Below, piece after piece: positions 9,101-43,319 of a stretch of 46,879 bases of DNA. The notes below the pieces were generated by a model. It saw only the letters and a program-made list of their open reading frames with translations, made no database searches and was not told the origin of the DNA. Every line of letters starts with the position of its first letter. Position 1 is the first letter of the stretch. The position numbers and the translations under genes were made by a program. This DNA is from Octopus sinensis (taxonomy: Eukaryota), in NCBI RefSeq assembly GCF_006345805.1, contig NW_021834586.1:1-46879 (forward strand). Direction: 5' to 3'.

Positions 9101-9563
9101 CCATTCCCACATAATCTAGATGCGTGTCCAAGGTAGCGTTCCAATCCCCTACAGTACAGTAAAGTCTAGACGTACCCAGGAAAACCTCTAGACGTCTGAA
9201 GGAATCCGCCCGACCCGTTAAGGACGGTGCATAAACTACCATCAGACGGAATGCACACCCATTTCTGCCATCCACGTCCAAGACAACCAGCCTACCCCCG
9301 GGTCTAAGATATGTTCTTACTTTTACATTTAGACTCTTTCGAAAAAGCACCACGGTACCTCCACCACCCATGTTCGGCAGACAGGGAGAAAAATAAATGT
9401 CAAATTGATCGCCAAACATGCACGCGAGGGCCCGCGGTTTGCTGAGTCTGGTTTCACTGATAGCTACTATATCCACGTTCAGTGACTTGATGTCGTTTAG
9501 AAGGTAATCTTGCTTCCAAGCCGACGCCAAGCCACGCGCATTCACACAACCTAATTTAAGCAT
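6180..9563 (-). pseudogene. Tx1 copy 1 ORF2 (APE endonuclease-reverse transcriptase), frameshifted
   Basis: Track pieces 8961-9563, 7786-9084, 7464-7769, 7172-7396, 6885-7226 and 6298-6552; 3' end approximate. Confidence 0.88.
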
Positions 9564-9629
9564 AACTGACGTTTACGAAAATTGTGTTTCACACACTACA
9601 TTGGAAGAGACAAGAGGCAAGAGGGAAGG

Positions 9630-11472: not shown

Positions 11473-11670
11473 TTTTTAATGTCGAGAAGAAAATTACACA
11501 AATTAAATAGGGTTGAAACTGCCCCTAGGGGTAAATTCCTCCCTTGGAAAAACACTCAAACGAAAGTTGGGTGGCTTTAACACCTTATTTACAAAAATGT
11601 ACACAAAATATGGGCTATAAATAGTCAAAATAAACGATTACCTTCGGAGCCGAGGTTGACAACACCTCCG

Positions 11671-12022
<352 letters not shown>

Positions 12023-12023
<1 letters not shown>

Positions 12024-15000
12024 AAGGCCCATCACTCTGCGTTGAGCAGAGTGATGGGCCTGAAATTATCTATGACGTCCCCCTTGTTTGGGTCTTTCTT
12101 AATCAGTGCCACTGCTCCTCGCTTTACAAAAGCAGGAATACTCCCGTTTTGCTGCCAGTTGCAGTAGACAGCTGCCAAGACGCCTCCAAACAAGTCTGGC
12201 ATATGAAAATAAAGTTCGTAGGGCAGACCATCCAAGCCTGGTGACTTGTCTCTCGCGCAGCCTACCATCGCATCCTGTACGTCCGCATCTGTGATAGGCC
12301 TTTCACAAGACTCCACCTCTCTTGCTGAGAGTCGTGGCAAGGCATGCAGGTAGGCACTAAAGTCCACTCTGCGTTCTGACCCACGACTTGTCCCAAACAG
12401 TTGGGTGAAGTGTTGTTGAAAAGCCCCACACATCCTTTTAGGCTCGAGTACTTCGCGCCCCTGTTCATCTATAAGAGACTTGATGGTGGCTCTGTTGCCT
12501 CGTTGCGTCTCCACCACTCGGGCCTCTTGGGCGGCTCCAACTCCTTCGTTCCTCAGAGCACGCATCCTAGCTCTGACAACGCATCCCTCGTGTTTGGCGT
12601 TGAGGTGTTGGCCGAGGGCCAATCTCGCCGCCAGCACGTGTGACGCGATGCCAGTTCTAAGTGCCTCTTCTAAAACCTTAACTAATTCTCCCTCTATTCT
12701 ATTTCGGTCTAATGCTAGGGCTTTACTGTATCTGACTGATTCTGCTTTAATTGCTTTTTTTAGGGCATACCACCATCTGTTGTTGATGATGGTACCCGTC
12801 AAAGCTCTCTTAACTAATGTGCTGATCCGGTCCCTGTAAACCTGTCGTGACGCGTTCAGTTTCCAGTAACCAGGACCCTGCCTATGTGTCTTATCTAAGT
12901 CAAGTGTACAAGTCACAAACTTGTGATCTGTGTAACTGACTATATGAAATTGTGGACAACCTACACTATTTTTATCTATTGTCCTACAGAATACTCTATC
13001 TAAGTATGATCTGGACGACTCCATGTCCACATTGGCACATTCGGGTGGTCCAGTCGGTACCTGTCAGACAGTTGGAAACGTCTGAGCAGGTCTTTGAGGC
13101 ATTTGCATCCCCTTCTATTGCTATCTCTGCCCACGTAGTCTAGATGCGTGTCCAGGGTGGCATTCCAATCCCCCACTAAAAGTAAAGGACGAGACGTTCC
13201 CATGAAAGACTCTAGACGTCGAAAGAAATCTGGTCGGCCTGTTAAGGACGGAGCATAAACTGCTATCAGTCGAAAAGCACACTCATTGCTGCCATCGACA
13301 TCCAAAACGACCAGCCTACCCTCCGGGTCTAGGAAAATTGCTCTTACTTTGAGATCCAGACTCTTCCGGAGAAGCACCGTGGTGCCACCTCCGCCCATTC
13401 TCGGTAGACACGGAGAAAAATAAATGTTGAAATGTGTACCGAAACTGTGCTGGAGTGCCCGCAAGTTGTGGAGTCTGGTCTCACTGATGGCTATGATATT
13501 CAGATTTAGTGACTTGATGTCATTTAACAGGTAGCCTTGTTTCCAAGGCGACCCCAAGCCACGTACATTTATACTGCCTATTCTGAGCATGTTCCGATAA
13601 AAAATTGTGTTTTACACACGAAAAGAAAGTGCAAAAAAGGAAAGAGAGAGAGTAAAGGTTACTTGTTGTTCGAAAGTCCTTTGTTTTTCACCTCACAGTC
13701 TTCTTCCATGAGTCTTTTGTATAGTTTCTTTGATGAATACTTTTGAAATCTCCTTACTGCATCAGGGTAAAGAGATTTCAGGGTGCTGTATGTGTTCTGT
13801 GTTACGTGTATTATTTTAATGTGTTGTGGTGGTGTTGTGCGTGGGTGGTTACTTGTTTTTATGTCGTTTTCAGTTATGTTGGTGTTTGACCTAATGTGTT
13901 CCATTAGGTCGTGGTTGTTTGTGTTTATGGCTGTCAACATTGTTGGGGGGTTTGATGATGGTGTGTTTGTGTTGTTGATGTTTTGTTTTCTGTGGATGTT
14001 TTTGTTTCGGGAGTGGTGAATCTTCCTGCTTTGTTTGCTATCTTTTCTTTTCTAATTACAAATCAGAGGAATCAGAGCTTGGGAGAGGGAAAATATTGGG
14101 TCTATTGTAGACTGTGTTGATTTTGTTGTTGGTGTTGGTTGGTGAGCGTTAGGTTGTGGTGTATGCGGTTTTGAAGGTGGGGTGTGGGTATTTTGTGTTT
14201 GAGTGATTGTAGGTATTGTTGTGTTGTTTGGGGTGTCAATTTTGTGGGGATTTGGAGTAGTAATTGTTTCTTCATTTTCGATGAGTGTCTTTTTGGCAGA
14301 TGTCCTTGGTTTTGGAGTTGGTTTATTCTTGGTTGTTGTTGTGGTGGTGTTGTTGCTTCTGTTCTTGGTGCAGTTGGTGTGGTTGTTTGGTTGGTGAGGT
14401 TTGTTTTTTGTTGATTTTCTGTGATTAGTCCTGTTCGTGCAAAACGTGGTGTGGGTAGTAAAGCTGGTTTATTTGTTTTTTTTTCCGGCTGCTGTTGTTG
14501 TTGCTGTTGTTTCTTGCGGCAGATTTGCAATCTTTTTTTCAGGTGTTGCTCACTGCCGCATATGTAGCAACGTGGTCTTCTGCCATCGACGACCACATAC
14601 AACTTGTGGTCTTATGATACACATATCTGGGTGGGTATTTTCTTTATGTCCTCTTGGTTTATATGTAGTAGAAATTCTACTTTTTTTCCCACCCAGTTTT
14701 TGTGACCGTGGTTTCTAAAATTGTGAAATCTTTCATTTTCACACATAAGGCCTTTACTAGCCATAGATTGTTAGCTATTTTTGGGACATTGTTTAAAGTG
14801 ATCTTAGTCACTTTCTGTCCACGATAGCTTGGTGTTAGTTGAAGTTCATCTGAATGAAGAGTTAGCGTTGAGAAACGTCTTGCTAACTTGTTCCACCAGG
14901 TTACATACTCTTTGTAGTTCCAGATGGGTTTCAAGCATTTTTCGATTTTGCTTGTGTTAGCCTTCTCTGCACTTTTTGTTTTCTTATTAATTATTTTATA

Positions 15001-16012
15001 AATAATTGTTCTTTTTTTTTCATCTTCTAATATTTCTTGTGGTATGTTTATTTTTACTATACCATCTACTTCTGTTATTAAAATGTTTGTGTTTTTATTT
15101 GTTGTGCAGTAAAACATACTGTTGTCTTTTTTCTTTAATCGCCTCGGCGAAATTTGTTGTTGTTTTGTTATTGTTGTTGCTGGTGGTGATGTTGTTGTTG
15201 GCTGCAGTTGGTAAAATCGGTGTATTTGGTTTGATTGTGCAAGTAGGAAGGGGTGGAAAATTACTTGCATAGTTTATCCCTGTATTCAAGCAGCTTTTGT
15301 GAATTTGTTTGGTGGTCACAGTCTTTTGTTTATTCCCTTCAGTTCTTGTTGTTGGAGTAAAACAGGTCTGAACCTGTTGTTATTGTTGTTTTTGTTGTTG
15401 GTGTTGGCGGTGGTGTCGGTGGCAGAAGAGATAGCCGTGGCAGAAGATGTCGAAATGGTGGCGCAATTTTTATTTTTGTTGTCATTGTTATTGTTGTTGT
15501 TGTTGTTGGTAGTTGAGGTAGTGGATGAGGTGGCGGCGGTGGTGGTGGTGGTGGTGGTGGTGAAGGCGGTGGTGGTAACAGTAGTAGTCTCTTTGTTGTT
15601 CTTGTTAGTGGTGGTGGTGGTGGTGGTGGTGGTGGTGGTGGTGGTGGTGGTGACAGGGTTGTTACTACAAGTGGTTGCAGCGTTCATTGCAAAGTCATTG
15701 ATGATTTTACTTTGCGTGTATAAATTCTTTTTTTCTCCTAGCGTTTCCAGACTAGGAGAAAGCTGGTCGATAAAGGAACGCGACCATCGTTCTACAATAC
15801 AATTTCTCGACATTTTCAAAATGTCGAGAAAGAAATTACAAAAATTAAATAGGGTTGAAACTGCCCCTATGGGCGAATTCCTCCCTTGGAAAAGCACTCA
15901 AACGAAAGTTGGGTGCCTTACACACCTTATTTACAAAAATGTACACAAAATATGGGCTATAAATAGTCAAAATAAACGATTACCTTCGGAGTCGAAGTGA
16001 CAGCACGTCCGT
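12023..16012 (-). mobile_element. Tx1-clade element, copy 2: intact 5' end, ORF1 and endonuclease; 3'-truncated early in RT
   Basis: 5' leader nearly identical to copy 1; ORF1 knuckle CYICGSEQH; ORF2 MLRIGSINVRGLG...SETR...GDWN...RPITLLNAE, then a hairpin and (ATCT)n. Confidence 0.9.
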
Positions 16013-16043
16013 CGATAGATAGATAGATAGATAGATAGATAGG

Positions 16044-16136
<93 letters not shown>
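16013..16136. repeat. (GATA)n spacer between Tx1 copies 3 and 2
   Basis: Directly visible. Confidence 0.95.
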
Positions 16137-16138
<2 letters not shown>

Positions 16139-18700
16139 AGAGGGCACAAAATACAAAGCAGAGCTTTTCTTTTTGGGAAGAAGAAGGGGAAAAGGGGGGT
16201 TCGAATTTCGATCAAAATTGATCTTGAAAAAAAAAGGCTGATCGATAAGGATCGTGTATCACAGAAATGTCAATGTAAAAAGAGAATACAGACCACGGTA
16301 ACCTTGGGCAATTATGTCATGCAAAAAAACACATTACAATAAGTGACTCTTTTTTACTTTCTTTTTTGTTTTGGTGCATAGGATCATTGTCAAGATGTCT
16401 TCGTCATTCATACGTGCCATCCTTGCTACATTCACCCATCTTTTTTTTAAACATTCGCTAGACAATACTTTCCTCTCTACCCTCACCTTCCTCTTCAAGT
16501 GACACTTGACGAAGTTGATGAGAGATTGACCAGATGCGCCATAGCCACAAGTACGATGAAATTGCCTCTTCCTTCCCGTTTCAAGGAAGGAGATGCGACA
16601 ATATTCACGATAGACTCGGTTGATAAACCAACTCGTCCCAAACGCGATAGCAGTCGTTCCACGTAGGCCCACAGGTCAGAAATGGCTGGACACTGTACGA
16701 GTGCGTGCAGAACGGTTTCGTATCTCTGAGCGTATCTCGGGCAGATCGACCGCGTATTTCTCGAGGTATGCCTATAGAGCTTATCCCGAACAGGTAGCGC
16801 TTCTCGATAGCACTGCCAGGCCAGTGATCTCTGGAAGTTTTCCATAGGTCCCGGCCCGAAAGTCGTTTCAAACAGACGGGTCAGGTATTCCTCGTTGACA
16901 CCCAGGTTCGCCCCGAGATCGTCATCGTACCTCCACTCCACTAATCCCCTTTAGAATGCTTTGGTTGTGTTGAAATCGCTCAAGGTCGATTCTGGACGAC
17001 ATAGTTGCTTGAGAGCAACGCGACACTCGCGGTGCCATTCGCCCTTCCTCGGTCATGGAATGGAGATGAGGGAAAGCGCGCCATACAAACGGCGACCACA
17101 CCTGTTCACCGTCGTCTACATAGAGCCGGAGATGTCACAGTCTCAGCGCATGCCTGCGCATTATCAACCACGGCATACCCAGCCCTCCTTTTATCGAGCG
17201 TTGGCAGTAAACGGATCGCCTGACCATCGAAACGCATCCTTTCCACAAGAAGCGGAAGAGAATGCGTTCCAGTTTGGTGATGGTAGGGTCGGGACAAGGC
17301 ACGACGGTCAGGCGGGTAGTAGATGACAGAAGCGATGTACGTGTTCGCCACCTCTGCCCGACCGTTTAGAGACAGCTTCCCCTCAGCCCATTGGCGGGCG
17401 AGAGTGACCACCCTACTCATTATCTCGTTCCAGTTCTTCTCCGAGCAACTCGACCGGAGCCTCTGTCCAGCGTCCAATGAAGGAGGTGCTGGTGGACGGC
17501 ATGGACTTGCTTCTCCAGGTGCTGAGCCGCAATCCCACTGACTTTTCCGGTTGACTTTCACTCATGTTACCGCTTCGTAGTATTTCAGTGTCTCGCCGAC
17601 CAGCTCGATGTGCCTCTGGCTAGACACTATAACAGTGACGTCGTCCGCGTATGCAGACACGCTCGTCCCGCATCCCAATTCTCGCGGGATGACCCTCAGT
17701 GTCGCCAGCTTCCACAGTAGTGGCTCGAGTGTCAATACGTATAGAAGCAACCAGAGGAGGCATCCCTGACAGACCGAACATGCAATGTCGAAGGGTCTCG
17801 ATAGATGCCCATTTACGCGAATTACCGAACGGATACCTCTGTGGAAAGCAGCTATCCAGCCGCGGAAGACGGGGCCGAAACCAACCGCTATGAGGACAGC
17901 GTCAAAGTATCGATGGTCTACCCTATCGAAAGCTTTGTTTGATCCAAATTGATCAGGGTCCCACACCCTGTCTATGATGTAGCGCATCAGATGGAGGTTG
18001 TCATGGATGCTCCGCCTCGGCACGGCGCACCCTCTTGGCTAACACCTTGGCCAAAATTTTCAACTCTGCATTGAGCAGAGTGATGGGCCTAAAGTTATCT
18101 ATTACATTCCCCTTGTTTGGGTCTTTCTTCAGCAGCGTTACGGATGCTCACTTTTTGCTGTTTGTTGCAGTACACTGCTGCCAAGACGTCTCCAAACAAG
18201 TCTGGCATACAAGTGTAAAGCTCGTAGGGTAGACCATCCAAACCCAGCGATTTGTCCCTCGAGCCTTCTGCCATTGCGTCCCGCACTTCCGCCGCCGTGG
18301 TAGCACCTTTCTTGTCGAGAGTCGTGGCAGACTGTGTAGGTAGGCACTGAAGTCCACCCTGAGTTCTCGCTTGTCAATCGTCCCGAACAGTCGGGCAAAA
18401 TGCTGTTGAAAGGCCTCACACGTTTTACTTGGCTCGAGTAATTCACGCCCCTGTTCATCTACCAGAGACCGAATGGTGGATTTGTTGCCCTGTTGCGCCT
18501 CCATCACCCGGGTCTCTCGCGAGGCTCCAACACCTTCGTTCCTTAGAGCACTCATCCTAGCTCTGACAACACACCGTTCGTCTTTGAAGTGTTGGTCGAG
18601 GGCCAACCTCGCCGCCAAAACGTCGGATACGATGCCACTTCTAATCGCTTCTTCTAGCTTCTTAACTAGGTCACTCTCTACTCTGTTTCTATCTATGGCT
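16137..18700 (-). mobile_element. Tx1-clade element, copy 3: 5'-truncated, with internal deletions
   Basis: Starts at [18 protein letters not shown]; contains KAFDRVDH, SAYADDV and QCYREALPVRDKLY; 3' UTR is homologous to copy 1. Confidence 0.9.
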
Positions 18701-19603
<903 letters not shown>

Positions 19604-19606
<3 letters not shown>

Positions 19607-22600
19607 TATGGCTGCTCCCTCGTTATCGAGTATGGCCATTGCACGAAGCTTAACCATTATTGGTGCGGTGATCGAATGTGACTTTTTAGCCCAGCTAAAG
19701 ATCTACAATGTCTACAGAATTGGCAACTAAAACCTTCACCGGTAATAGCCGGCTGTAGTTGTAACTGGGCTTCATGTACCTTTGCATGTCGTTTAAGTCC
19801 TCCTGCCGAATTACACTCTCTTCCACATGCCCGACAGATATGATTAGTATGGTGTGTTACACCACCACCACCACCAGTGGCCAGGTTGTCACTCATCTTT
19901 CTCGCTTTATGACTACGTAGGTGTCTCTTGAGTCCAGCTTTACTGAGGCAGGTCTTACACAGACACTGCATGTCAGCATCATAAGAAGACCCTTCCCATC
20001 TGGAAGTGTAACAGTGATGCCCTTCCTGACATCTCTCCTTACTTTCTCATGTTGCAACTCGAGATTTCTCAAAAGTGGCAGTCCCCTCGTGCACAATCCT
20101 TCTCCACCTGTTACGATCAATGGCTATGCCTTCCCAAAGGAAGCCTTCGGCAAGTCCTTATACCTCTTTTTTGGGTTTATGTGGAGGTTGTTCTTCTTTA
20201 GCTAACTCTCCATAAAAGAGTTGCTTTGGCATCCTTGAATCCTTCATTCTGACCAGATGACCACTCCATCTGAGCCTTTGCTTTAACACAAGAGCTTCTA
20301 TACTTTCACACAGAGAGCCTGTCAATATTTCAAGATCACTGATGCGGTCTTTCCACTTAATGCAATATATTCGTCTGAGGCACATCTGATGAAAACGTTC
20401 TAGTTGTTTAAGGTGGTATCGATATGTGACCCACGTCTCGCAGGCATAGAGAAGAGAAGGGAGCACATATGCCTTGTACACCTTTATCTTTGTCTTTCTG
20501 CATATGTCTCGCCGACTCCAGAGGCGCTTTTCTAGCCTTCCGAAAGCAACACAACACTTGCTTTCCTAATTCTATATGGAATTTCATCATCCAAATTGCT
20601 ATATCTATTAATAGTGCTTCCCAGGTAGACAAACTGATCAACTACATCAAGTCGTTTACCATACACATAGATATTTGGTACACTATACTGCTTACCAGGG
20701 GCAGGTTGATGCATGACAACAGTTTTCTTAAGATTGACTGTCAAGTGTAAGCATCAGAGAATGCATTCAAGATGTGCTGCATATCAATTTCTGTATGTGC
20801 TACTAGCTCACAATCATCTGCATACCAAAGGTCTCTTATGATAGAGGTAAATACCTTTGTTTTTGCAACAAAGTGCCTGATATTAAATATGCTGCCAGAG
20901 GTTCGATAATGGATGTAAACACCGTAACAGCAGTTTCTGAATGCAATACAGAACACCATCGCAAAATATATGGAAATTAGGGACGATGCCAGAATAACCC
21001 CCTGTTTCGCTCCATTTTGTATTGAAATGGGCTCCGACATTTTCCCTCTAGCATTCATCCTACCATTCATGTCTTCATGAAAAGACCTAACCAAACAAGG
21101 AACTTTTCAGGACACCCAAGTTTCTGGATGACTTTTCACAATGCTTTTCTATTGACGGTATCGAAGGCTTTTGTCAGATCGACAAAAACCTGATACAAAT
21201 CCAGACCATGTTCCACACACTTTTCCTGAAGCTGTCTAGCTGAAAAGATCATATCAGCAGTGCCACGTCCCACACGAAAGCCAGATTGACTTTCTGGAAG
21301 AACACAATCTGCAATGTATTTCAGCAGACGATGCAGAAGTACTTTGCATAAAACCTTTCCTACGACAGACAGCAATGATACTCCCCTATAATTACCATAA
21401 TCATTCCTGTTGCCCTTTCCCTTATACAGGACCACCATTACTGTATCTCTCCAGTCCTCAGGTACAGATTCACTAGTCCATATCTTACCAAACAAAGAGT
21501 GAAGTTTCTGCATAAGTTTCTCACCCCCATGCTGTAACAACTCCGCATGTATGCCATCCATACTCGAAGACTTCCCATTATTCAACCTTGAGACAGCCAT
21601 TGCAACTTCTTCCAACTTTGGTGGTTCTGCGAGTGCTGCCTTCACAGGTAATCCAGGGATGAGATTGAGAACATCCTCACTAACTACAGACTGCTGATTC
21701 AAAAGTTCATCAAAGTGTCCTTGCCACCTTCTCAGAATTCCTTGTGAATCACGAAGAAGTTCTTTACCATCCCTGCTTCGAAGTGGTGTCATCAGGGAAG
21801 ACGTCGGTCCATAATCTTCTCACAAGAGACCATATAACAGCTTTGGAATCTGATGCCGCCTGTATCTCATCAGCCTTCTTACTCCACCACGTATCCCTCA
21901 TCTGAGAAAGCTTTTGCCTCACACGTGATTTTACATCCTATGCAACATTTCCCTTTCCAGTGGATTTGCTGACAAATAGCGTGACAAAGTACGTCTTTTA
22001 TCAGCCAATAAATCATCTATATGTTCATCATTTTCTTTAAACCAATCTTGATGCTTTCTTTGTATCAATCCCAGAACTTTCTTGCCTATATCATAAACTA
22101 ACTTTTTAAGGATCGCCAATCCTCCCCAATATCTGCAGCATTCATTTCCTCTCGTAAAGTTCTCTTCACACTATTACACCTAAGACGATCAACATTCAGT
22201 CTTTTAGGCAGGGTGATCCCTGCAGTTCGGATTTTATGTTTTGTGACTAATTTCACTTTTGCACGTACTAGGCGGTGGTCAGTCCAACACTCAGCTCCAC
22301 GAAGAACACGAACACACTGCACATCCTGTCTGTCACGCACCCTAACAAGGATGTAATCCAGAATATGCCATTCTTTAGATGCTGTGTGCATCCATGTAGT
22401 CTTAAACTTATTCTTTCGTTGAAACATGGTATTCGTAAACACACAGACGCAGCTCCTCACACATCTGCAGCAAAAGCATGCCATTACTATTACACTTCCC
22501 CACCCCATGCTTTCCAATTACAGTCCATGTGTTAAAATCCCTACCCACTCAAGCATTAAAGTCACCCAGTACGATGACTTTGTCTGCCCGAGGGATATTT

Positions 22601-24060: not shown

Positions 24061-24350
24061 GTGAAAAATTATTGAATTTTGTCTCTTAAATCAGCGCACC
24101 ATTCTCTATTGATATCTTTAGAGACGCACAGATATACACAGAGGGACACAGCACAGACGTACATACACATGTACATTCAAACCAACGCATACACTGATAT
24201 ACACACATATGCGAATATATGTACATGTATAGATACACACACACACACACACACACACACATATCTAAGAGAATATTACGGTAGTAGTTTTAATACCTGG
24301 AAATAATATCTATTGAAATTATATTCCGTTCGATTGGCCCCTGTTAATAT

Positions 24351-24420
<70 letters not shown>

Positions 24421-24523
24421 ATGTATGTATGTATGTGTGTGTGTGTGCATGTATGTATGTATGTATGTATGTATGTATGTATGTATGTATGTATGTATGT
24501 ATGTATGTATGTATGTATGTATA

Positions 24524-24755
24524 TATTGGTGCGTAATTATTGCGGCTCTTTTTTTTTCAACAAATTTTATTCAACAAAAACAGTTTTAAATGATTATTGC
24601 GGAGCTTATTCACCATCTACTTCAATTTCTGCTTCCCATTTGCTTGGCAAACGGTCAGACCATCATTTAAAGATGTGTTTGTTAAATATTGTTATTGTTT
24701 TTGTTGAATAAAATTTGATGAGAAAAAGCCGCAATAATTATGCACCAACCCAATA
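24524..24755. mobile_element. mariner-derived MITE (~230 bp)
   Basis: TIRs ttggtgcgtaattattgcggc / gccgcaataattatgcaccaacccaata resemble mariner TIRs (ttaggttggtgcaaaagtaattgcgg); the inverted match extends into aaattttattcaacaaaaaca. Confidence 0.8.
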
Positions 24756-25399
24756 CATATATATATTATGCTTCGGTGTTTTTTGCATTGATAAGGTTTT
24801 TGATTCATGGTATATGTTTTCATCAAAGTTAAATTCTGCCAAAATTATCTTTGCTTTCTAAATTTCGACATTTATCATGTTAGTACCAAAACAAGAATAT
24901 GAGTCGATGGAACTGGCTCAGCCACGTTTGTGAAATGACCTTGCGTCGCCTATGCGTGTTATGTGTCCGGTCAGGATTGTAAGGTAGGGGGGTTTATTTT
25001 ACAATCGGATGTATGTATGTATGTATGTATGTATGTATGCATGTGTGTGTGTATGTATTTATTTTCACTTTCTCTTTTTAATTTAGGCTAAATTTTGACC
25101 GGCCACCGACTTGATAGCAACGTTATAAAAGAAAGTTTCTTGAGTTAACCGGCTCCTCTAAATTTAAAGATGTTCTTGCAGTTTCCTACAGTTTCAGATA
25201 TCGTGGTCAATTATAGTATGGGAATTAAGGATTTGCATTCTCTCCCCGAGAATTCAGGTCCAGTAACAGTTTGTTCCCACCAAGTTGGTATGTACCCTGT
25301 CACTCCAAATAAAATAAGCTGGAAAATGCAAATGTTGTGTATTGGTTCGCAAACTTGTTTATCAATGTTCTCTTCCTCTTATATATTTCTAACTTTGGT

Positions 25400-25640: not shown

Positions 25641-27627
25641 CAACAATGTAGTTGCTGTGTGTACATGTGTGCATGTATATGTTTGTGTGGTGTGTGTGAA
25701 TATATAGACAGGGAAAAGTGTAGAGATTTATGTGATGAAATTTCTCCCTGACTTCCAGCAGGTTACTTTGGTGCAAATCGTATTATTCTTGGAGTGTTAT
25801 CATACTGAGTTCGATTTCCATGAGAGCGTCCTGCATAACTTTTATTTTCTACTCACGTTTTGTGACTTTTGTAAAATTGTTTCACAGAAATTTCGTAAAT
25901 GGAAGATAATGTGTTATGTTTAATAATAGTTTTGAATGTATTAACACTCATTGTATCGAGTGCTTATAATTTATGTATCTGAAGAAATATGAGGAATATA
26001 CTATTAATATAGTAATAGCACGGTGTATTAAATACCGACTGTCATACAGAGGGATGTTTTTTCATGAAACACAACTTACCAAGAGTAAATCAACAGGGGC
26101 CAATCGAGCGGAATATAATTTCAATAAATATGATTTCCAGGTATTAAAACTACTTCCGGAATATTCTTTCAGTTATGTATGTGTATGTATACATGTGCAT
26201 ATATTCGTACATGTGTGTATTGTTGCTGTGTATGTACATGTGTATGTGTGCATGTTCATGTATGTTTGTGCTGTGTCTCTGCGTGTATATCTGCACGTCT
26301 GTTAAAATATCAATATGGAATGGTGCGTGTGCAGATTTAAGAGGCAAAATTTCATATCTCGTTTCTAGCTTGCTAATTTAGTATAAATAGTGCAACTCTC
26401 GAGAATGGTTCTCTCGACTGTGAATTAAATTAATATTCAAGTTGCAGGTAGAAGTTTTGTTCCTCTTATTTTTGGTTTCTATTGTGATATATCTTACATA
26501 AAAAAAATTTCAAGAATAAAAGATAAAATGGTATCTTTAATAATATTTTGTAATTAAATGAATATTAGTCATACTGAAGATATCCTAAGAAACCCTAAGC
26601 TATATATATATATATATTATATATATATATATATACATATATTCTGTATTTTGTATTGATAATACTTTTATTTCTTGGTATATATTTTCATAATTTCAAG
26701 TTAAATGACCGCAAAATAACCTTTGCTTTATAATTTTTTTATGTTTATAATGTGAGTACCAAACCAAGACCATGACTTGTTGAAATTGGCTAAGCCACGT
26801 TTATGCAATCACCTAGCATCGCCGATGCATGTGAGATGTCCTGGCAGGACTGTATGACGGAAGATCACGGTTGAAATGCTTTTGATCATACGTTTGCTTA
26901 ATCAGAGATAGTCTGAGGTGAAATGATGATAATAACAAAAATAACAACCAATAATATCTCTCTATCATTGATAACTAAAATCAAAGGTGAGAGATAATCA
27001 TCTACGCTGTTATCAATGTTCAAAGTGAAGCAACGTCTCAGAGATTCACCATCTATCTTTGCACATCGTCAAACATCCAAGAACGATCAACCCTTAACAG
27101 AACCAAAACATGCATTCTTCTCTCCAACTAACAACATGGTTTCGGGCTACTAAACTCAAAAACCATTCTGCTCACAAACCTACACCAAAATTTCCTGATA
27201 GTTTCTTCGATTATCATTCACACAAGCGAACACCGTCTTAAGTTCCATTGCAAAAAAATTCTCAACTCTAATCTTCTCTACCTACTTGGAGGTAAATTCT
27301 AGAAATGTTGCTATATTTTAATACATAATTAATACACAATCTTGATTATTGCTTTCACTACGTTTCGACTTTTACACGCTCCAGCCTACTGATTAATGTA
27401 AACAGTGTTTACATTATATGAATTCCCCGTCTCACAAACATAGAATTGTATTATCCAATCGGTACAGAGCCAACATAAGCTATCGATTGAGGTTTATAAG
27501 CCTTAAACATTCATTCTGACACTGCCTACAGACGTAACGTAATGGTTAAAGACCTTGAATAATGTAGTGCATGCACATAGGTGTTCTGAATCCAATGTCC
27601 AAGCAAGACACTAAAGTGAATCACAAA

Positions 27628-27667
27628 ACACCTGAAGAAGGTTGGGGTGTACATCCGAAACGTAGTG
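27628..27667 (+). ncRNA. Minimal type I hammerhead ribozyme motif (Penelope pLTR-type)
   Basis: cac CTGAAGA aggttggggtgtacatcc GAAAC GTA gtg: intact catalytic core, cac/gtg stem I, palindromic ACGT stem III; stem II is decayed. Confidence 0.6.
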
Positions 27668-27731
27668 AACTAAACAATTAAGATGAGGTCATCAGTCTGA
27701 CTGATATAAACAGTATACGTAATATATATTC

Positions 27732-27963
27732 TATTTCTTTACTACTCACAAGAGGCTAAACACAGAGGGGACAAACAAGGACAGACAAACGGATTAAGTC
27801 GATTACATCTACCCCAGTGCGTAACTGATACTTAATTTATCGACCCCGAAAGGATGAAAGGCAAAGTCGACTTCGGTGGAATTTGAACTCAGAACGGAAC
27901 GGCAGACGAAATACGGCTACGCATTTCGCCCGGCGTGCTATCATTTCTGCCAGCTCGCCGCCC
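27732..27963 (-). mobile_element. tRNA-derived SINE with a perfect 18 bp target-site duplication
   Basis: Same family as 4332-4935; tatacgtaatatatattc at 27714-27731 and 27964-27981. Confidence 0.92.
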
Positions 27964-28089
27964 TATACGTAATATATATTCGCCATCTCAGAAATATAGA
28001 CTTGTAACATCTAGGTTCCTTAAATTCTTGAATGGAGTACAAGGATCTATCTTTTTTTTAACCATCATTTTTATTATGAACTTATGTAA

Positions 28090-28350
28090 TTGCTAAAGAA
28101 TATTCGGTTCACGATTGAAAGATTGTGCGTTCAATTCCGGGCGCTGCGGCGTTGTATCCATGGGCAAGACACCTTATTGTTTGTTGGTCCAGTTCATTCA
28201 GCTGGTAGAAATGAGTAGCACTTGTATTTCAAAGGGCCGGCCTTGTCACACTTTGTGTCACGCTGTATTTCCCTGAAAACTACGTTAAGGGCACGCGTGT
28301 CTATGGAGTACTCAGCCACTTGCACGTTAATTTAGCGAGCACATTGTTGA
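28090..28350 (+). mobile_element. tRNA-derived SINE (family of 3553-3840)
   Basis: gttcaattcc B box, tgggcaagacacc core, ctacgttaagggcacgcgtgtctatggagtactcagccac. Confidence 0.75.
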
Positions 28351-28530
28351 TCGGAACATCCGCCGTGCCAATCCCGTAAAATATCGCAAGCTTCATAAAT
28401 AGATGATATCACACACAACATGTAGCTATATGGCTGTTCCGCGTCCCTACAAGTTATCGCGAAGCTTTATAGACAGATATCACGTACATCCTTTTGTACC
28501 ATTCTGCAGACACATCTTCCGAACTACACC

Positions 28531-28607
28531 TTGACGGAAGGGCACCTCCAGGAGTGGAGCCTGTGGCTTAATTTGACTCAACACGGAAAAACTCACCCGG
28601 TCTGGAC
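28531..28607 (+). pseudogene. 18S rRNA gene fragment, left part
   Basis: ttgacggaagggcacc.ccaggagtggagcctg.ggcttaatttgactcaacacgg.aaaactcacccgg is a conserved SSU rRNA segment. Confidence 0.92.
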
Positions 28608-29283
28608 GCGAAATTTTTTCCCACGAGAGTTCCGGACCCCAGTAACGAACTCATTTGCATACAGCCAATCAGAGCTCACCTTGAAAATCCACATACTGTG
28701 TACTGCTACAGTACAGCCAGTCAGGCATAGAATGGTGTATGTCACTCTGTGAGTACAGCCTAGCAGGTTTCACATAAGCGCCACAACCCCTAATACCACC
28801 ACCACCTTATAGATCAATTGAGTACCATCTCTGTTTGCAGCTAACATTAGGTACCTATGGCTCACATTGAGATTAGTGATACTGCATGTACGCATTGTAT
28901 TAAGCAAGGAGGGCGCAATACGACACAACGCCATATTGATTACGTTGTTCCCAGATCAACACACCAACATTTTAAATTAGGAATGTACAAATCAGTCAAA
29001 AAACTAGGAACTACACACGTTTACATTTTCTAGTAAAATACGCAAATTGGCAACACTTATGGCATCATCGGTGAGCAGCTCTCCATTCACTTTATACACT
29101 AAATTTCACATTTGTTACCTCTATTAACCCGTTTAGAACTGTTAGGTTTTGCTATGACGCACATTTTCCCCTGAACTCAACCTGAGTATTTTTGTGACTA
29201 GGTAGACACTAGATCGATAGTTGAGTTCTGATTGGTTGTATACAAATGAGTTCAAAACTAGAGTCCGGAAAAAAAAATTTGCA
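28608..29283. mobile_element. 676 bp non-autonomous TIR element inserted in the 18S fragment
   Basis: Inverted repeats 28631-28678 and 29222-29269 match at 40/48 by hand alignment; terminal aaatttttt/aaaaaattt; flanking duplication GTCTGGAC/GTCCGGAC; no ORF. Confidence 0.85.
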
Positions 29284-29525
29284 GTCCGGACACCGACAGG
29301 AGTGACAAATCGATAGCTCTTTCCCGATCCGGTGGGTAGTGGTGCATGGCCGTTCTTAGTTGGTGGAGCAATCTGTCTGGTTGATTCCGATAACGAACGA
29401 GACTCCGGCCTGCTAACTAGCGCGTCGATTAGTGCTTTTCCGGTAACGCGGCGGCGCCGAAGCCGTCGTCCGTAGCTCCGAGCGCGGCCCGGGCTTGCCG
29501 TTGCCGCCGTTCTCCTTCGATCAAC
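29284..29525 (+). pseudogene. 18S rRNA gene fragment, right part, ending in a GC-rich V7 expansion
   Basis: gtccggacaccgacagga.tgaca.a.cgatagctc...ggtgcatggccgttcttagttggtggagc...gataacgaacgagactc...gctaactag continues the left fragment. Confidence 0.9.
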
Positions 29526-29789
29526 AAGAAACGGTAATTTGAAACATGGGACTTAAAATAGCTTTGGCAAAATGTACTGTCTCTGTTCTTACCAGCAACA
29601 ACAAAGAACATAACCATCATACTCGACAACATGAACACGCAAACACACACACACACACACATAGACAGACAATAACGTTAGTAGTTACATACAGTATCTC
29701 CACCGTAGAGGAGGGTAAAGAAAGCATAATGTCTCTACAAACACACTTAGTGCATCCACAGGTGCCAAATTTGGGTAACAGAACTAAGT

Positions 29790-30240
29790 AACAATAAAAT
29801 GCATTATATCCGTCGTGGAATACACCAGTCATGTCTGTCTCCAGCACCCCTCTCCACAACAAACCACATTAATCTAGCAAGAATATAAACAAAGCATTTA
29901 ACGCCATCACAGGATGCACGCATACAACACCTACGACCCACCTGCATAATCCAACAAAGTTGCTAAAAATGAAAGTTAACATGGACATGAAAGGGACACA
30001 GTTGCTGCAGTAGGCTTCCTCCACCACCGCAAAACCCCACCGCGCAGTCCCTTTGCTTACACGCACAATTACACTTGAGACAGACACATCTATAACTAAC
30101 TCCCACCGCACTGCTGCAATACCTTCAACGAATTACCAACCTTCCCATTCGGTATAGACACACCTATGAAATCCCAGTACACTACAATGGTACTTGCCAC
30201 CACATCCCCAAGAAAATACTGCAACACCGTTCTAAGTTGA
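29790..30240 (+). mobile_element. Decayed LINE RT C-terminal fragment (I/Jockey/RTE-X-like)
   Basis: Frame AFNAITGCTHTTPTTHLHNPTKLLKMKVNMDMKGTQ resembles the post-RT 'TGC..TP..HLH' motif. Confidence 0.4.
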
Positions 30241-30414
30241 ACAAACGTAAAACACACAATCAGACAGACAAAGACAAAGAGAGGGTGGGTGAAAGAAAGC
30301 ATCATGGAAAGAAAATTGGCAGTAATGTCTATAAACATTGCGAAATGCCCAGCGCCAGAGATAGTTAGAGGCCAACAGCTTCTCTCTCATTGTAACCCAG
30401 TCTACTTTGCCTTG

Positions 30415-30895
30415 CATACACACACACACACACACACGCACACAAACACACAAACACACACATACACACAGATACATATATACATGCATACATGCATAAA
30501 TACAAACATACATACATACATACATAAATAGATACATACATACATACATGCATACATACATGCATACATGCATACATACATACATACATACATACAAACA
30601 TGCATGCATACATACATAATACATACATCCAAACATAAATACATACATACATACATACATGCATACATACATACACACATACATACATACAAACATGCAT
30701 ACATACATACAGACATACATACATGCATGCATACATACATGCATACATACATCCAAACATAAATACATACATACATACAGATATACAAACATGCACATAT
30801 ATATACATACAAACATGCATACATACATACAAACATAGATACATGCATACATACATACAAACATGCATACATACATACAAACATACATACATACA

Positions 30896-30928
<33 letters not shown>

Positions 30929-31103
30929 GCATGCATACATACATACATGCATACATACAAACATGCATACATACATACATACATACATATATACATACAT
31001 ACAAACATGCATACATACAGACATACCAGCATACATACAAACATACATACATGCAAACCTACATACATATATGCATACATGCATACATACATGCATATAT
31101 ACA
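30415..31103. repeat. Degenerate (TACA)n array at the 3' end of RTE copy 2
   Basis: Directly visible. Confidence 0.95.
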
Positions 31104-32359
31104 TTATTGTGGCTGCCGCCTCGTTATCGATTATGGCCATTGCTCGAAGCTTAACTAATACTGGTGCTGTGATCGAATGTGACTTTTTAGCCCAGCTAAA
31201 GATTTACAATGTCTTGTACAGAATTGGCAACTAAAACCTTTCCTGGTAATAGCCGGCTGTAGTTGTAACTGGGCTTCATGTACCTTTGCATGTCGTTTAA
31301 GTCCTCCTGCCGAATTACACTCTCTTCCACATGCCCGACAGATATGATTAGTATGGTGTGTTACACCACCACCAGTGGCCAGGTTGTCACTCATCTTTCT
31401 CGTTTTATGACAACGAAGATGACTCATGCGTCCAGCTTTTCTGAGGCAGGGTCTTGCACAGACGTTGCGTGTCAGAATCAAAGGAAGACCCTTCCCTTCT
31501 GGAAGTGTAACAGCGATACCCTTCCTGACATCCCTCCTTACTTTCTCATGTGCAACTCGAGATTTCTCAAACGTGGCTATCCCCTCATGCACAATCCTTC
31601 TCCACCTGCCACGATCAATAGCTATGCTTTCCCATGTGTCAGGAGAGATGCAAGCATCTCTTAAGGAAGCCTTCGGCAAGTCCTTATACCTCTTTTTTGG
31701 TTTATGTGGAGGTCGTTCTCCTTTAGCTAACTCTCCATAAAAGAGTTGTTTTGGCATCTTTGAATCCTTCGTTCTGACCAGATGACCACTCCATCTGAGC
31801 CTTTGCTTTAACACAAGAGCTTCTATACTTTCACACCGAGAGCCTTCGAGTATTTCAAGATCACTGATGTGGTCCTTCCACTTAATGCAATAGATCCGTC
31901 TGAGGCACATCTGATGGAAACGTTCTAGTTGTTTAAGGTGGTATCAATATGTGACCCACGTCTCGCAGGCATAGAGAAGAGAAGGGAGCACAAATGCCTT
32001 GTACACTTTATCTTTGTCTTTCTGCATATGTCTCGCCGACCCAGAGGCGCTTTTCTAAACTTCGAAAGCAACACTTGCTTTCTAATTCTATATGGAATTT
32101 CATCATCCACATTGCCATATCTATTAATAGTGCTTCCCAGGTAGACAAACTGATCAACTACATCAAGTCGTTTACCATTCACATAGATATTTTACACTAT
32201 ACTGCTTACCAGGGGCAGGCTGATGCATGACAACAGTTTTCTTGAGATTGACTGTCAATCCTAAGGCAGCGCAAGCATCAGAGAATGCATTCAAACTGTG
32301 TTGCATATCAATCTCTGTGTATTCTACTAGCTCACAATCATCAGCATGCAAAAGGTCTC
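31104..32359 (-). mobile_element. 5'-truncated RTE copy 2
   Basis: Aligns to 19604-20830; ORF 31155-31910 encodes the RT C-terminus and three C2H2 fingers. Confidence 0.92.
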
Positions 32360-33196
32360 ATATATACATACATACATATATACATACAGACAAACATACA
32401 TACATACATATAAACATACATACATGCATACATACAAACATGCATACATACATACAAACATGCATACATACATGCATATATACATACATACATACATATA
32501 TACATACATACATACAAACATACATACATGCATACATACATATATACATACATACATATATATATACATACATACAAACATACATACATGCATACATACA
32601 TACAAACATACATACATGTATGCATACATGCATACATACACACAAACATACATAGATACATACAAACATACAAACATACATACATACATGCATACATGCA
32701 TACATACATACATGCACACATACATACATACACACATACATACATACTTACATACATACAAACATACATACACACACATACATACATACAAACATACATA
32801 GAAACACATACATACATACATACATACATACATACATACATACATACATGCATACATACATACATACATACATACAAACATGCATACATACATACAAACG
32901 TACATACGTGTATGCATACAAACATACATACATACATACATACACACAAACATACATACATACATACATGCATGCATACATACATACATATATACATACA
33001 CGCAAACATACATACATACAAACATACATACATACATACATACATGCATGCATGCATGCATACATACATACATACATACATACATACATACATACATACA
33101 CACAAACATACATACATATATACCTACATACATACAAACATACATACATACATACAAACATACAAACATACATACATACATACAAACATACATGCA

Positions 33197-33227
<31 letters not shown>

Positions 33228-33301
33228 CATACATACATACATACATACAAATCAGCATGCATATATACATACATACATACATACATACATACATACATAC
33301 A

Positions 33302-33332
<31 letters not shown>

Positions 33333-33340
33333 CTACATAC
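32360..33340. repeat. ~1 kb degenerate (TACA)n array at the 5' flank of RTE copy 2
   Basis: Directly visible. Confidence 0.95.
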
Positions 33341-33624
33341 GTAAACAAAACGTAGTTAAAAGAAATAACTAAGAGTGGACGGTAGTATATATATGAACAA
33401 CAGAAAAATTTAGGTATAGTAAATACCCTACAACATAAATTTTTGATTTATTAAAAACGCATTATCTCTGTTTGTAAATGATGCTTAATAATTACGAAAT
33501 GGCAATGAAGATCATGTGCGGATGAGGAAGGGAGATAATCTCAAGAATTAACAATTCTCCTTCCAAATTTGAAATACCAATACGAAAAGGACAGGTTTAT
33601 CGTCTACAGATAAGGGGATAGTTA

Positions 33625-41998: not shown

Positions 41999-42139
41999 TA
42001 TTTAGATCCAATAGAGGTAGAATATATACAAAAAATCACGCCAACCGTAATAGATGAATATCAATTTAATACACAACAGAGAGAGCTACTAACACTTTCA
42101 TGCTTTTATGATACTTTAACTAGGCATATTTATATATAT

Positions 42140-42236
42140 ACATGGGTACATATGTATGTACGTATGTATGTAAGTATGCATGCATGCATGTATGTATGTA
42201 TGTATGTATGTATGTATGTATGTATGTATGTATGTA

Positions 42237-42299
<63 letters not shown>

Positions 42300-42820
42300 G
42301 TATGCATGCATGCATGTATGTATGTATGTATGTATGTATGCATGTATGTATGTATGTATGTGTGTATGTATGTATTTATGTATGTATGTATGTATGCTTG
42401 TATGTATTTATGTATGTATGTATGTATGAATGTATGTATGTATGTATGTATGTATGTATGTATGTGTGTATGTATGTATGTATTTATGTATGTATTTATG
42501 TATGTATGCATGCATGTATGTATGTATGTATGTATGTGTGTATGTGTGTATGTATGTATGTATGTATGTATTTATGTATGTATTTATGTATGTATGTATG
42601 AATGTATGTATGTATGTATGTATGTATGTATGTGTGTATGTATGTATGTATTTATGTATGTATTTATGTATGTATGCATGCATGTATGTATGTATGTATG
42701 TATGTATGTATGTATGTATGTATGTATGTGTGTATGTATGTATGTATGTATGTATGTATGTATGTACGTATGTATGTATGTATGTGTGTATGTATGTATG
42801 TGTGTATGTATGCATGTATA
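42140..42820. repeat. (TATG)n array
   Basis: Directly visible. Confidence 0.95.
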
Positions 42821-43319
42821 TGCTCCTCTAAATACGTGTGTGAGCCGAAACAGAATTACAAACCTACGATTGGTCTACCATCTCATCGCACTGGATTCAG
42901 ACTAATAATAACAAGAACAATGACTCTAGCATAGAATCAATAACCTCGCAAAAAAGACTGTGGAGGCATTTTCTGGGAACAGAAAATATTCTGTTACTTT
43001 CGGTCACAAGCGACGAGAAGAACAAACTGAAGTTACTTTAGAAATGTCATAAGCGACATGCCGACTTATTCATTAATCCACACATGATTTTGAATATGGA
43101 AAATTACCCAAGGCTTTGAAAGCTGAATATCAGCGTAAACCGGATCCTGGTTTGTTAATTACGAGTCTTTTCTACTACAAAACCTCTTTTAGCCGCAACA
43201 CACACAAATACATAGAAACAAACTAATTTCTCTTTATGTAATAAAATAAATATATACAAATTATAAAAATTTGTAATAAAATAAATATATACAAATTATA
43301 AAAATAATAAATAAAAAAT

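What the first reader, a model, noticed from the sequence alone, without database searches (positions are those of the whole stretch)
28531..29525. TIR DNA element inserted at a palindromic site in 18S rDNA: candidate rDNA-targeting DNA transposon
Seen: the conserved 18S sequence ...ACTCACCCG GTCCGGAC ACCGACAGG... is split by 676 bp. The target is duplicated (GTCTGGAC at 28600-28607, with a CpG-type C>T, and GTCCGGAC at 29284-29291), and the insert has ~70 bp imperfect TIRs. Because the site is palindromic, the TSD can be read as 6, 7 or 8 bp. Established: rDNA-specific elements are mostly non-LTR (R1/R2 in 28S; R7/R8 in 18S); Pokey is a piggyBac in 28S; Dada DNA transposons target small-RNA genes with 6-7 bp TSDs. 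I know of no TIR element specific for 18S. Inference: a non-autonomous member of an 18S-targeting family, whose disrupted rDNA unit was dispersed here.
Basis: partly seen in the sequence, partly recalled or inferred. Interest (0 to 1): 0.8.

Follow-up and report, generated by a model that had tools for sequence, protein, structure and literature searches.

The report
Decayed TIR transposon in 18S pseudogene fragment
A 676-base non-coding "cut-and-paste" transposon sits inside a stray, decayed 311-base piece of 18S rRNA gene, at a palindrome (GTCCGGAC) that is the textbook favourite target of two common transposon superfamilies, so nothing yet shows it hunts 18S genes.

Summary
An 18S rRNA fragment (Rfam model 1153 to the V7 region) is split by 676 bp. 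Model positions 1222-1229 occur on both sides: GTCTGGAC at 28600-28607 and GTCCGGAC at 29284-29291. The insert has imperfect 65-74 nt terminal inverted repeats (TIRs), 80-83% identical. Two intact rDNA contigs carry the same site uninterrupted.

The insert is a non-coding, non-autonomous TIR element with an 8-bp target site duplication (TSD). The 18S piece is an orphan pseudogene fragment of about 311 bp, about 5% decayed, with no other rDNA in the window.

GTCCGGAC is exactly the published optimal target of the Drosophila P element. It also fits the hobo (hAT) optimum, GTNCGNAC. The left TIR carries TTCCGGAC at nt 23-30, where the P element carries its own internal target-like site. The palindromic site therefore needs no 18S-specific recognition.

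I found no other copy in the window or in any collection I could reach. Those collections appear not to hold this genome. Copy number and the flanks of other copies, which is the decisive test, stay untested.

- Ordinary P/hAT-type site preference: about 0.68.
- True 18S-targeting family: about 0.2.

The parts
28531..28607 (+). 5' piece of the 18S rRNA pseudogene fragment (Rfam SSU_rRNA_eukarya model 1153-1229)
   Evidence: 66.6 bits, E 4.9e-18. Alignment to intact 18S genes.
28600..28607 (.). Left copy of the target site duplication, GTCTGGAC (one CpG-type C>T change relative to the right copy)
   Evidence: Model positions 1222-1229 are duplicated.
28608..29283 (.). Inserted 676-bp non-coding TIR element (non-autonomous DNA transposon copy)
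   Evidence: 18S continuity resumes exactly at both borders. No protein homologue for any of its six reading frames. GC 40%, like the window.
28608..28681 (+). Left terminal inverted repeat (about 74 nt, starts GCGAAATTTTTT)
   Evidence: (I1, I2), alignment, shuffle test.
29219..29283 (-). Right terminal inverted repeat (about 65 nt; its reverse complement starts TGCAAATTTTTTTTT)
   Evidence: (I1, I2), alignment.
28630..28637 (+). Subterminal TTCCGGAC in the left TIR, nt 23-30 from the end; 7 of 8 identical to the target GTCCGGAC
   Evidence: This is the position where the Drosophila P element carries a target-like site (nt 20-33 of its TIR; PMC2577343).
29263..29270 (-). Subterminal TTCCGGAC in the right TIR (read on the minus strand), nt 14-21 from the end
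   Evidence: Its 14-mer context scores 10/14 against the P target motif, and only 24 of about 46,865 window positions (0.05%) score 10 or more.
29284..29291 (.). Right copy of the target site duplication, GTCCGGAC
   Evidence: The alignment starts at model 1222.
29284..29520 (+). 3' piece of the 18S pseudogene fragment (model 1222 into the G+C-rich V7 expansion). It ends before the conserved CTTCTTAGAGGGAC block.
   Evidence: alignment A1.

Best explanation
This is one old, decayed copy of a non-autonomous cut-and-paste DNA transposon (MITE-like, 676 bp). It has imperfect TIRs of about 70 nt and an 8-bp target site duplication, and it lies inside an orphan 18S rRNA pseudogene fragment of about 311 bp in repeat-rich animal DNA.

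Shown: the insertion, the TIRs, the duplication, the empty-site state in intact 18S genes, and the absence of coding capacity.

Inferred: it was mobilised in trans by a transposase of a superfamily that makes an 8-bp staggered cut. The P superfamily is the more likely candidate and hAT the second. Such transposase complexes act as symmetric multimers and prefer palindromic targets. The published optimum for P is GTCCGGAC and for hobo GTNCGNAC. The conserved 18S sequence CCCG-GTCCGGAC-ACC happens to contain that optimum exactly once. The element's own ends carry the same motif subterminally (TTCCGGAC at nt 23-30 on the left and nt 14-21 on the right). The P element has target-like sites in its TIRs in the same way, flanking its 17-nt staggered donor cut. 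Site choice is therefore explained by ordinary motif preference, not by recognition of 18S as such.

Open: whether the 18S fragment was already here when the element landed, or was copied here together with the element.
For: Insertion, TSD and TIR:
-.

Empty site:
- Intact 18S genes in L001 and L002 carry a single uninterrupted GTCCGGAC. It is the only GTCCGGAC in those 1.94-kb genes.

No coding capacity:
- A six-frame query found no protein with E <= 10 among 5.8 billion.

Target motif:
- P-element optimal motif ATRGTCCGGACWAT, whose central 8 nt are the TSD (PMC2577343).
- Table 4 of PMC3276498 gives hobo GTNCGNAC and P GTCCGGAC.
- The 18S 14-mer scores 10/14 against the P motif. Only 24 of about 46,865 window positions (0.05%) score 10 or more.

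End architecture:
- The P element has target-like sites at nt 20-33 of its TIRs (PMC2577343).
- Here TTCCGGAC lies at nt 23-30 of the left end.
- TCCGGA occurs only 7 times in 46.9 kb, and 3 of those are the target and the two TIRs.

Orphan status and age:
- No other rRNA sequence in the window.
- 4.8% change at invariant 18S positions.
- TIR arms 80-83% identical.
Against: - The termini (GCG.../...GCA) match neither the CA-type ends of known P-superfamily elements nor the YARNG ends of hAT. Those end consensuses are from my own knowledge.
- No autonomous partner or transposase was found, so the superfamily is inferred only from TSD length, target motif and end architecture.
- The P and hobo motifs were measured in Drosophila. 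Whether relatives in this host share them is unknown.
- TIR elements are sparse here: 3 inverted-repeat pairs in 46.9 kb. A blind insertion would hit the 311-bp fragment only about 0.7-2% of the time. A perfect 8/8 match to the optimum is also unusual for P, whose preference is weak (PMC3698922). Both points suggest a stronger specificity than ordinary P or hAT.
- The motif comparison was made after seeing the site.
Confidence: 0.68

Rival explanations
1. The element belongs to a family that specifically targets this 18S position. It would be a DNA-transposon counterpart of R-elements, Pokey or Dada. Its transposase would recognise more than the 8-bp palindrome. The copy seen here, with short 18S flanks, would have been copied out of the rDNA, for example by ectopic gap repair, or the element would have homed to an orphan 18S fragment.
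For: - The element sits in a 311-bp 18S piece although TIR elements are sparse in the window. The chance is about 0.7-2% per window.
- The target is a conserved, multicopy-gene site, which is the 'safe haven' logic of R1/R2, Pokey and Dada (PMC3706591, PMC8869645).
- The TIRs carry the target core subterminally. Dada-U6 shows the same kind of feature: its subterminal inverted repeats also occur in the U6 target (PMC3706591).
- The other GTCCGGAC in the window (7286) is unoccupied, so the 8-mer alone did not attract a copy.
- No 18S-specific DNA transposon is listed in the sources I read, so one cannot say it is already known to be otherwise.
Against: - Only one copy was observed.
- The target is fully explained by the generic P/hAT optimum.
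- The 18S piece is a decayed orphan, not an rDNA unit.
- No related sequence was found anywhere I could search, though those collections appear not to hold the host genome.
Confidence: 0.2
2. The insert was integrated by a tyrosine-recombinase (Crypton-like) site-specific reaction. GTCCGGAC would be the crossover core shared by a circular intermediate and the target, and the inverted terminal sequences would be recombinase-binding arms.
For: An 8-bp palindromic core flanked by inverted arms (AAAAAATTTGCA | GTCCGGAC | GCGAAATTTTTT in the circularised form) has the layout of a lox/FRT-type site. This follows from the sequence.
Against: - Any TIR element with a TSD looks like this when its ends are joined.
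- The 18S sequence on either side of the core (AAAAACTCACCCG / ACCGACAGGAGTG) does not resemble the element's arms, so no binding sites exist in the target.
- TIRs 70 nt long are not a Crypton feature (own knowledge).
- No recombinase remnant was found.
Confidence: 0.04
3. The insert is not a DNA transposon. It would be a group I intron, a truncated 18S-specific non-LTR element (R7/R8-like), or two unrelated repeats that happen to lie in inverted orientation.
For: Small-subunit rRNA genes do host group I introns in this general region in fungi and protists (own knowledge).
Against: - No intron family hit appeared at E <= 1 over 28300-29800.
- Introns make no duplication of the target.
- No poly(A), no microsatellite tail and no RT/endonuclease remnant are present.
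- The inverted repeats abut the duplicated 8-mer on both sides.
Confidence: 0.02

Closest known systems
P-superfamily non-autonomous elements (Drosophila P element and its MITE BuT5)
   Same: - 8-bp TSD.
- The target equals the published optimal P target GTCCGGAC.
- A target-like motif lies inside the terminal repeat at nt 23-30, as in P (nt 20-33).
- Size of about 0.7-1 kb and no coding capacity, like BuT5 (PMC2577343, PMC3276498, PMC3698922).
   Different: - Termini are GCG.../...GCA, not CATG/CA-type.
- TIRs are about 70 nt, against 31 nt in D. melanogaster P and 3 nt plus sub-TIRs in BuT5.
- No THAP-type transposase partner is known for it.
- The host is not an insect.
hAT superfamily MITEs (hobo/Ac/Tol2 type)
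   Same: 8-bp TSD. The target fits nTnnnnAn and the refined hobo motif GTNCGNAC (PMC3276498, Table 4).
   Different: hAT ends are short (about 10-25 bp) and begin YARNG (own knowledge). This element begins GCGAA/TGCAA and has long TIRs.
Pokey (piggyBac, Daphnia 28S rDNA) and its MITEs mPok
   Same: A TIR DNA transposon found inside an rRNA gene sequence. Pokey also occurs outside rDNA (PMC3315735, PMC4912750).
   Different: Pokey makes TTAA duplications in 28S, is shown to occupy many rDNA units, and has an autonomous piggyBac transposase. Here the duplication is 8 bp, the gene is 18S, and only a single orphan copy is known.
Dada transposons (U6, U1, tRNA, 5S rRNA genes)
   Same: DNA transposons specific for multicopy RNA genes. 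Subterminal inverted repeats recur in the target (Dada-U6). The transposase is related to the P/hAT/Kolobok/MuDR group (PMC3706591).
   Different: Dada has no TIRs and makes 6-7 bp TSDs. No 18S target is described (PMC3706591, PMC8869645). This element has 70-nt TIRs and an 8-bp duplication. GCGAAA at its left end is part of the TIR, not a direct repeat.
MITEs in the SSU rRNA gene of the microsporidian Nosema bombycis (SSUME1/2)
   Same: Small TIR elements inside small-subunit rRNA genes (listed in the review PMC10946416).
   Different: Those lie in expressed rDNA units of a microsporidian. Here the element lies in a decayed orphan fragment of an animal genome. I did not compare the sequences.

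Membership tests
TIR (class II, cut-and-paste) non-autonomous element / MITE | Terminal inverted repeats directly abutting a target site duplication | tested here: met
   The empty site is shown.
TIR (class II, cut-and-paste) non-autonomous element / MITE | No coding capacity | tested here: met
   (six frames, no hit at E <= 10); the longest ORF lying wholly inside the insert is 58 aa; a 73-aa ORF spans the left 18S/insert junction.
TIR (class II, cut-and-paste) non-autonomous element / MITE | Many homogeneous copies in the genome (this separates a MITE from a lone defective copy) | not testable with these tools
   The host genome appears to be in none of the searchable DNA collections. There were 0 hits in the window, viral, metagenome and prokaryote contigs.
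P superfamily | 7-8 bp TSD | tested here: met
   8-bp duplication of model positions 1222-1229.
P superfamily | Palindromic GC-rich target motif (ATR-GTCCGGAC-WAT for D. melanogaster P) | tested here: met
   The TSD is GTCCGGAC. The 14-mer scores 10/14; only 24 of about 46,865 window positions (0.05%) score 10 or more (PMC2577343).
P superfamily | Termini of CA(TG) type | tested here: not met
   The ends read GCGAAA... and ...TTTGCA. Known P-family ends vary widely (PMC3698922).
P superfamily | THAP-domain, GTP-dependent transposase encoded by an autonomous partner with the same ends | not testable with these tools
   No partner is in the window, and the host genome is not searchable.
hAT superfamily | 8-bp TSD fitting nTnnnnAn (hobo: GTNCGNAC) | tested here: met
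   GTCCGGAC fits both (PMC3276498, Table 4).
hAT superfamily | Short TIRs starting YARNG | tested here: not met
   The consensus is from my own knowledge.
Dada superfamily | 6-7 bp TSD, no TIRs, insertion in small RNA genes | tested here: not met
   The 8-bp duplication is readable as 6 only by extending the TIR. TIRs of 70 nt are present. 18S is not a described Dada target (PMC3706591, PMC8869645).
rDNA-specific transposable elements (R-elements, Pokey) | Most or many copies occupy the same position of the rRNA gene in rDNA units | not testable with these tools
   Only one copy was seen, in an orphan fragment. The intact rDNA contigs fetched (L001, L002) come from other organisms and are unoccupied.
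Non-LTR 18S elements (R7/R8) | RT/endonuclease ORF or a 5'-truncated derivative with a 3' tail, and no TIRs | tested here: not met

The most novel reading that the evidence does not exclude
The element is a member of a P- or hAT-like family that has turned its general liking for GTCCGGAC-type palindromes into real specificity for this conserved 18S position. It would then be the first 18S-specific TIR DNA transposon. The copy here would be a fossil carried out of the rDNA together with short 18S flanks.
Probability: 0.2. Interest if true: 0.75.

Novelty: new member of a known kind. Interest (0 to 1): 0.3.

Why it matters
As it stands, this is an ordinary fossil: a non-autonomous DNA transposon in an rRNA pseudogene fragment.

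One point is useful. In lineages whose 18S reads GGTCCGGAC, a conserved stretch of the gene is a perfect match to the optimal target of P and hobo-type transposases. 18S genes may therefore be a natural hot spot for such elements. That would be an easy evolutionary route to rDNA-specific DNA transposons.

If the family proves 18S-specific, it would add a third kind of RNA-gene-targeting DNA transposon beside Pokey and Dada. It would also be a candidate safe-harbour integration system.

Tried and rejected
1. Other copies in the window. A TIR core pattern with up to 3 mismatches, and blastn of 28401-29700 against the window, found only the two arms.

2. Other copies elsewhere. Two TIR patterns gave 0 matches in viral contigs and in JGI metagenome contigs (cap reached). 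A third, relaxed pattern gave 0 in prokaryote genome contigs.

3. The protein route to other copies.
- The 73-aa ORF across the left 18S/TIR junction had no candidate.
- A six-frame pseudo-protein of the whole element gave no hit at E <= 10.
- Ten window ORFs are not in the protein collection by exact look-up.
- The host genome therefore seems absent from the reachable collections, and copy number cannot be bounded.

4. Fetching the host's own rDNA through the spurious 18S ORF downstream of the site. 315 18S-derived ORFs were found, but none had this V7 sequence. The three contigs fetched come from other organisms and served only as empty-site comparators.

5. A larger mobile unit around the block. 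No inverted or direct repeats bracket 28531-29525.

6. A Dada link through GCGAAA at the left end (the commonest Dada TSD). Rejected: the matching right end is inverted (TTTGCA), so it is part of the TIR, and Dada has no TIRs.

7. Group I intron or other RNA family in the insert. Only a weak ALIL hit appeared (19 bits against a cut-off of 50), taken as chance.

8. Timing insertion against dispersal from TSD, TIR and 18S decay. All are of similar age (5-17% divergence), so the order cannot be resolved.

Full report
**Observation**

Rfam's eukaryotic SSU model matches two pieces of the window.
- Window 28531-28607 matches model positions 1153-1229 (66.6 bits).
- Window 29284 onward matches model position 1222 into the V7 expansion, ending near 29520 (-109 bits).

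Model positions 1222-1229 are thus present twice: GTCTGGAC at 28600-28607 and GTCCGGAC at 29284-29291. Between them lie 676 bp (28608-29283).

Joining the flanks gives ...ACTCACCCGGTCCGGACACCG.... I reached intact rDNA contigs through a spurious ORF that gene callers place in 18S just downstream of the site. Two of them, L001 and L002, are marine metagenome contigs with complete 18S genes. Both read exactly CACCCGGTCCGGACACCG without interruption. A third, L003, has GGCCCGGAC. The empty-site state is therefore documented in real genes.

**The insert**

- The ends are inverted repeats: 52 nt at 83% plus 20 nt at 80%.
- A gapped alignment merges them into one imperfect TIR of about 74 nt on the left and 65 nt on the right, with a 9-nt indel.
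- The end-to-end alignment score is 34, against 7.6 +/- 1.3 for 2000 shuffles. No shuffle reached it. Only 0.14% of random 676-bp segments of the window did, which I put down to microsatellite palindromes without checking them.
- The longest ORF lying wholly inside the insert is 58 aa; a 73-aa ORF spans the left 18S/insert junction.
- A six-frame query found nothing at E <= 10 among 5.8 billion proteins.

It is a non-coding TIR element with a target site duplication, that is, a non-autonomous cut-and-paste DNA transposon copy. Because GTCCGGAC is a perfect palindrome, the duplication can also be read as 6, 4, 2 or 0 bp with correspondingly longer TIRs. Eight is the simplest reading.

**Context**

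- The 18S material is not an rDNA unit. A permissive Rfam scan of the whole window finds no other rRNA sequence.
- The fragment totals about 311 bp (77 + 234).
- At 188 positions where three intact 18S genes agree, it differs at 9 (4.8%), several of them CpG transitions.
- The TIR arms differ by 17-20%, and the TSD has one CpG change. Fragment and insertion are both old, and their order cannot be resolved.
- No repeats bracket the whole block.
- The surroundings are repeat-rich animal DNA:
  - degraded non-LTR retrotransposons with endonuclease and RT remnants;
  - a SINE-like insertion with a perfect 18-bp TSD (D8);
  - long (ACAT)n and (AC)n arrays.
- From memory, the SINE-like sequences resemble those of octopus. 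I could not test this.

**What explains the site**

The literature gives a simpler reading.
- From more than 10,000 mapped insertions, the Drosophila P element has an optimal 14-bp palindromic target, ATRGTCCGGACWAT. Its central 8 nt are the TSD (PMC2577343).
- Population data give GTCCGGAC for P and GTNCGNAC for hobo, a hAT element. Both make 8-bp TSDs (PMC3276498, Table 4).
- The TSD here is exactly GTCCGGAC. The 18S 14-mer scores 10/14 against the P motif, and only 24 of about 46,865 window positions (0.05%) score 10 or more.

The same paper reports that the P element carries high-scoring target-like sites inside its own TIRs at nt 20-33. Their central 8 nt are nt 23-30. Together with the TSD copy, they flank the 17-nt staggered donor cut. 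In this element TTCCGGAC, 7 of 8 identical to the target, lies at nt 23-30 of the left end and nt 14-21 of the right end. TCCGGA occurs only 7 times in the 46.9-kb window, and three of those are the target and the two TIRs.

The anatomy thus fits the 'staggered-cut palindromic target' model for P-type, or less well hAT-type, transposases. The conserved 18S sequence simply contains the optimum, once per gene.

**Limits of that reading**

- The termini (GCG.../...GCA) fit neither P nor hAT end consensuses, although P-family ends are very variable (PMC3698922).
- No transposase partner is available.
- The motifs were measured in flies.
- I made the comparison after seeing the site.
- P target preference is weak in Drosophila (PMC3698922), so a perfect 8/8 site suggests either luck or a more stringent family.
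- TIR elements are sparse in the window, with three inverted-repeat pairs within 4 kb of each other. A blind insertion would fall in the 311-bp fragment in roughly 0.7-2% of cases. This keeps real 18S targeting alive as a rival. The figure is inflated in significance, however, because the window was flagged for exactly this coincidence.
- The other GTCCGGAC in the window, at 7286 inside a LINE remnant, is unoccupied.

**The decisive test could not be run**

- The element has no second copy in the window.
- Three TIR patterns between them gave no match in viral, JGI metagenome or prokaryote genome contigs.
- Translations of the element and of the junction found nothing.
- None of ten window ORFs is in the protein collection.
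- The host genome appears to be outside every reachable collection. Copy number, the flanks of other copies and the state of the host's rDNA remain unknown.

**Comparison with known systems**

The target-specific DNA transposons named in the introduction of PMC8869645 are:
- Pokey (piggyBac, TTAA, 28S);
- CryptonV (microsatellites);
- Dada (U6, U1, tRNA and 5S rRNA genes; 6-7 bp TSD; no TIRs) (PMC3706591, PMC8869645).

A 2024 review lists LTR retrotransposons in plant 18S genes and MITEs in the microsporidian Nosema SSU gene. The passages I retrieved from it list no DNA transposon in animal 18S (PMC10946416). A truly 18S-specific TIR family would therefore be new. The present evidence shows only a new member of a known kind.

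**Verdict**

| Reading | Probability |
|---|---|
| Ordinary P/hAT-type motif preference explains the site | about 0.68 |
| A truly 18S-targeting family | about 0.2 |
| Tyrosine-recombinase reading | about 0.04 |
| Not a DNA transposon | about 0.02 |

Interest is modest (0.3) unless the genome-wide flank census turns out in favour of 18S.

Noticed in passing
window 27714-27981: A perfect 18-bp direct repeat (TATACGTAATATATATTC) flanks a SINE-like insertion of about 230 bp on the minus strand. This is a clean retroposon target site duplication. From memory the sequence resembles abundant octopus SINEs, which would place the window in a cephalopod genome.
   Followed up: partly
window 7700-22000 (minus strand): Several broken ORFs carry Exo_endo_phos (APE endonuclease) and RVT_1 remnants. 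They indicate at least two degraded non-LTR retrotransposons.
   Followed up: partly
window 7286-7293: This is the only other GTCCGGAC in the window (context GAGGTCCGGACTGA, 10/14 to the P target motif). It is unoccupied.
   Followed up: yes
window 24075-24352 / 26085-26351 and 24509-24582 / 24696-24766: These are the only two other sizeable inverted-repeat pairs in the window (287 nt at 76%; 75 nt at 83%, flanked by TATG). They may be other TIR elements or inverted copies of a repeat.
   Followed up: no
window 27339-27367 / 27656-27684: A 29-nt inverted repeat (83%) lies 288 bp apart. It may be a small MITE. I saw no clear TSD by eye.
   Followed up: no
window 30350-33400, 42100-42900 and others: Long (ACAT)n, (AC)n and related microsatellite arrays produce dozens of sub-threshold Rfam 'mir-297 / mir-3149' matches. 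These are artefacts of low complexity.
   Followed up: yes
window 28383-28530: A partial tandem duplication of about 73 bp (ATCGC(G)AAGCTT..ATAGA..GATATCAC) lies directly upstream of the 18S piece. Its origin is unknown.
   Followed up: no
window 28911-29044 (minus strand, inside the element): A weak match to the ALIL frameshift pseudoknot of IS3-type elements (19.3 bits, cut-off 50, E 0.022). I take it as chance.
   Followed up: no
L002 631-823: In a TARA marine metagenome rDNA contig, a U2 snRNA gene (178 bits) lies about 2.7 kb upstream of the 18S gene on the opposite strand. This is linkage of U2 to the rDNA unit in an unidentified eukaryote.
   Followed up: no
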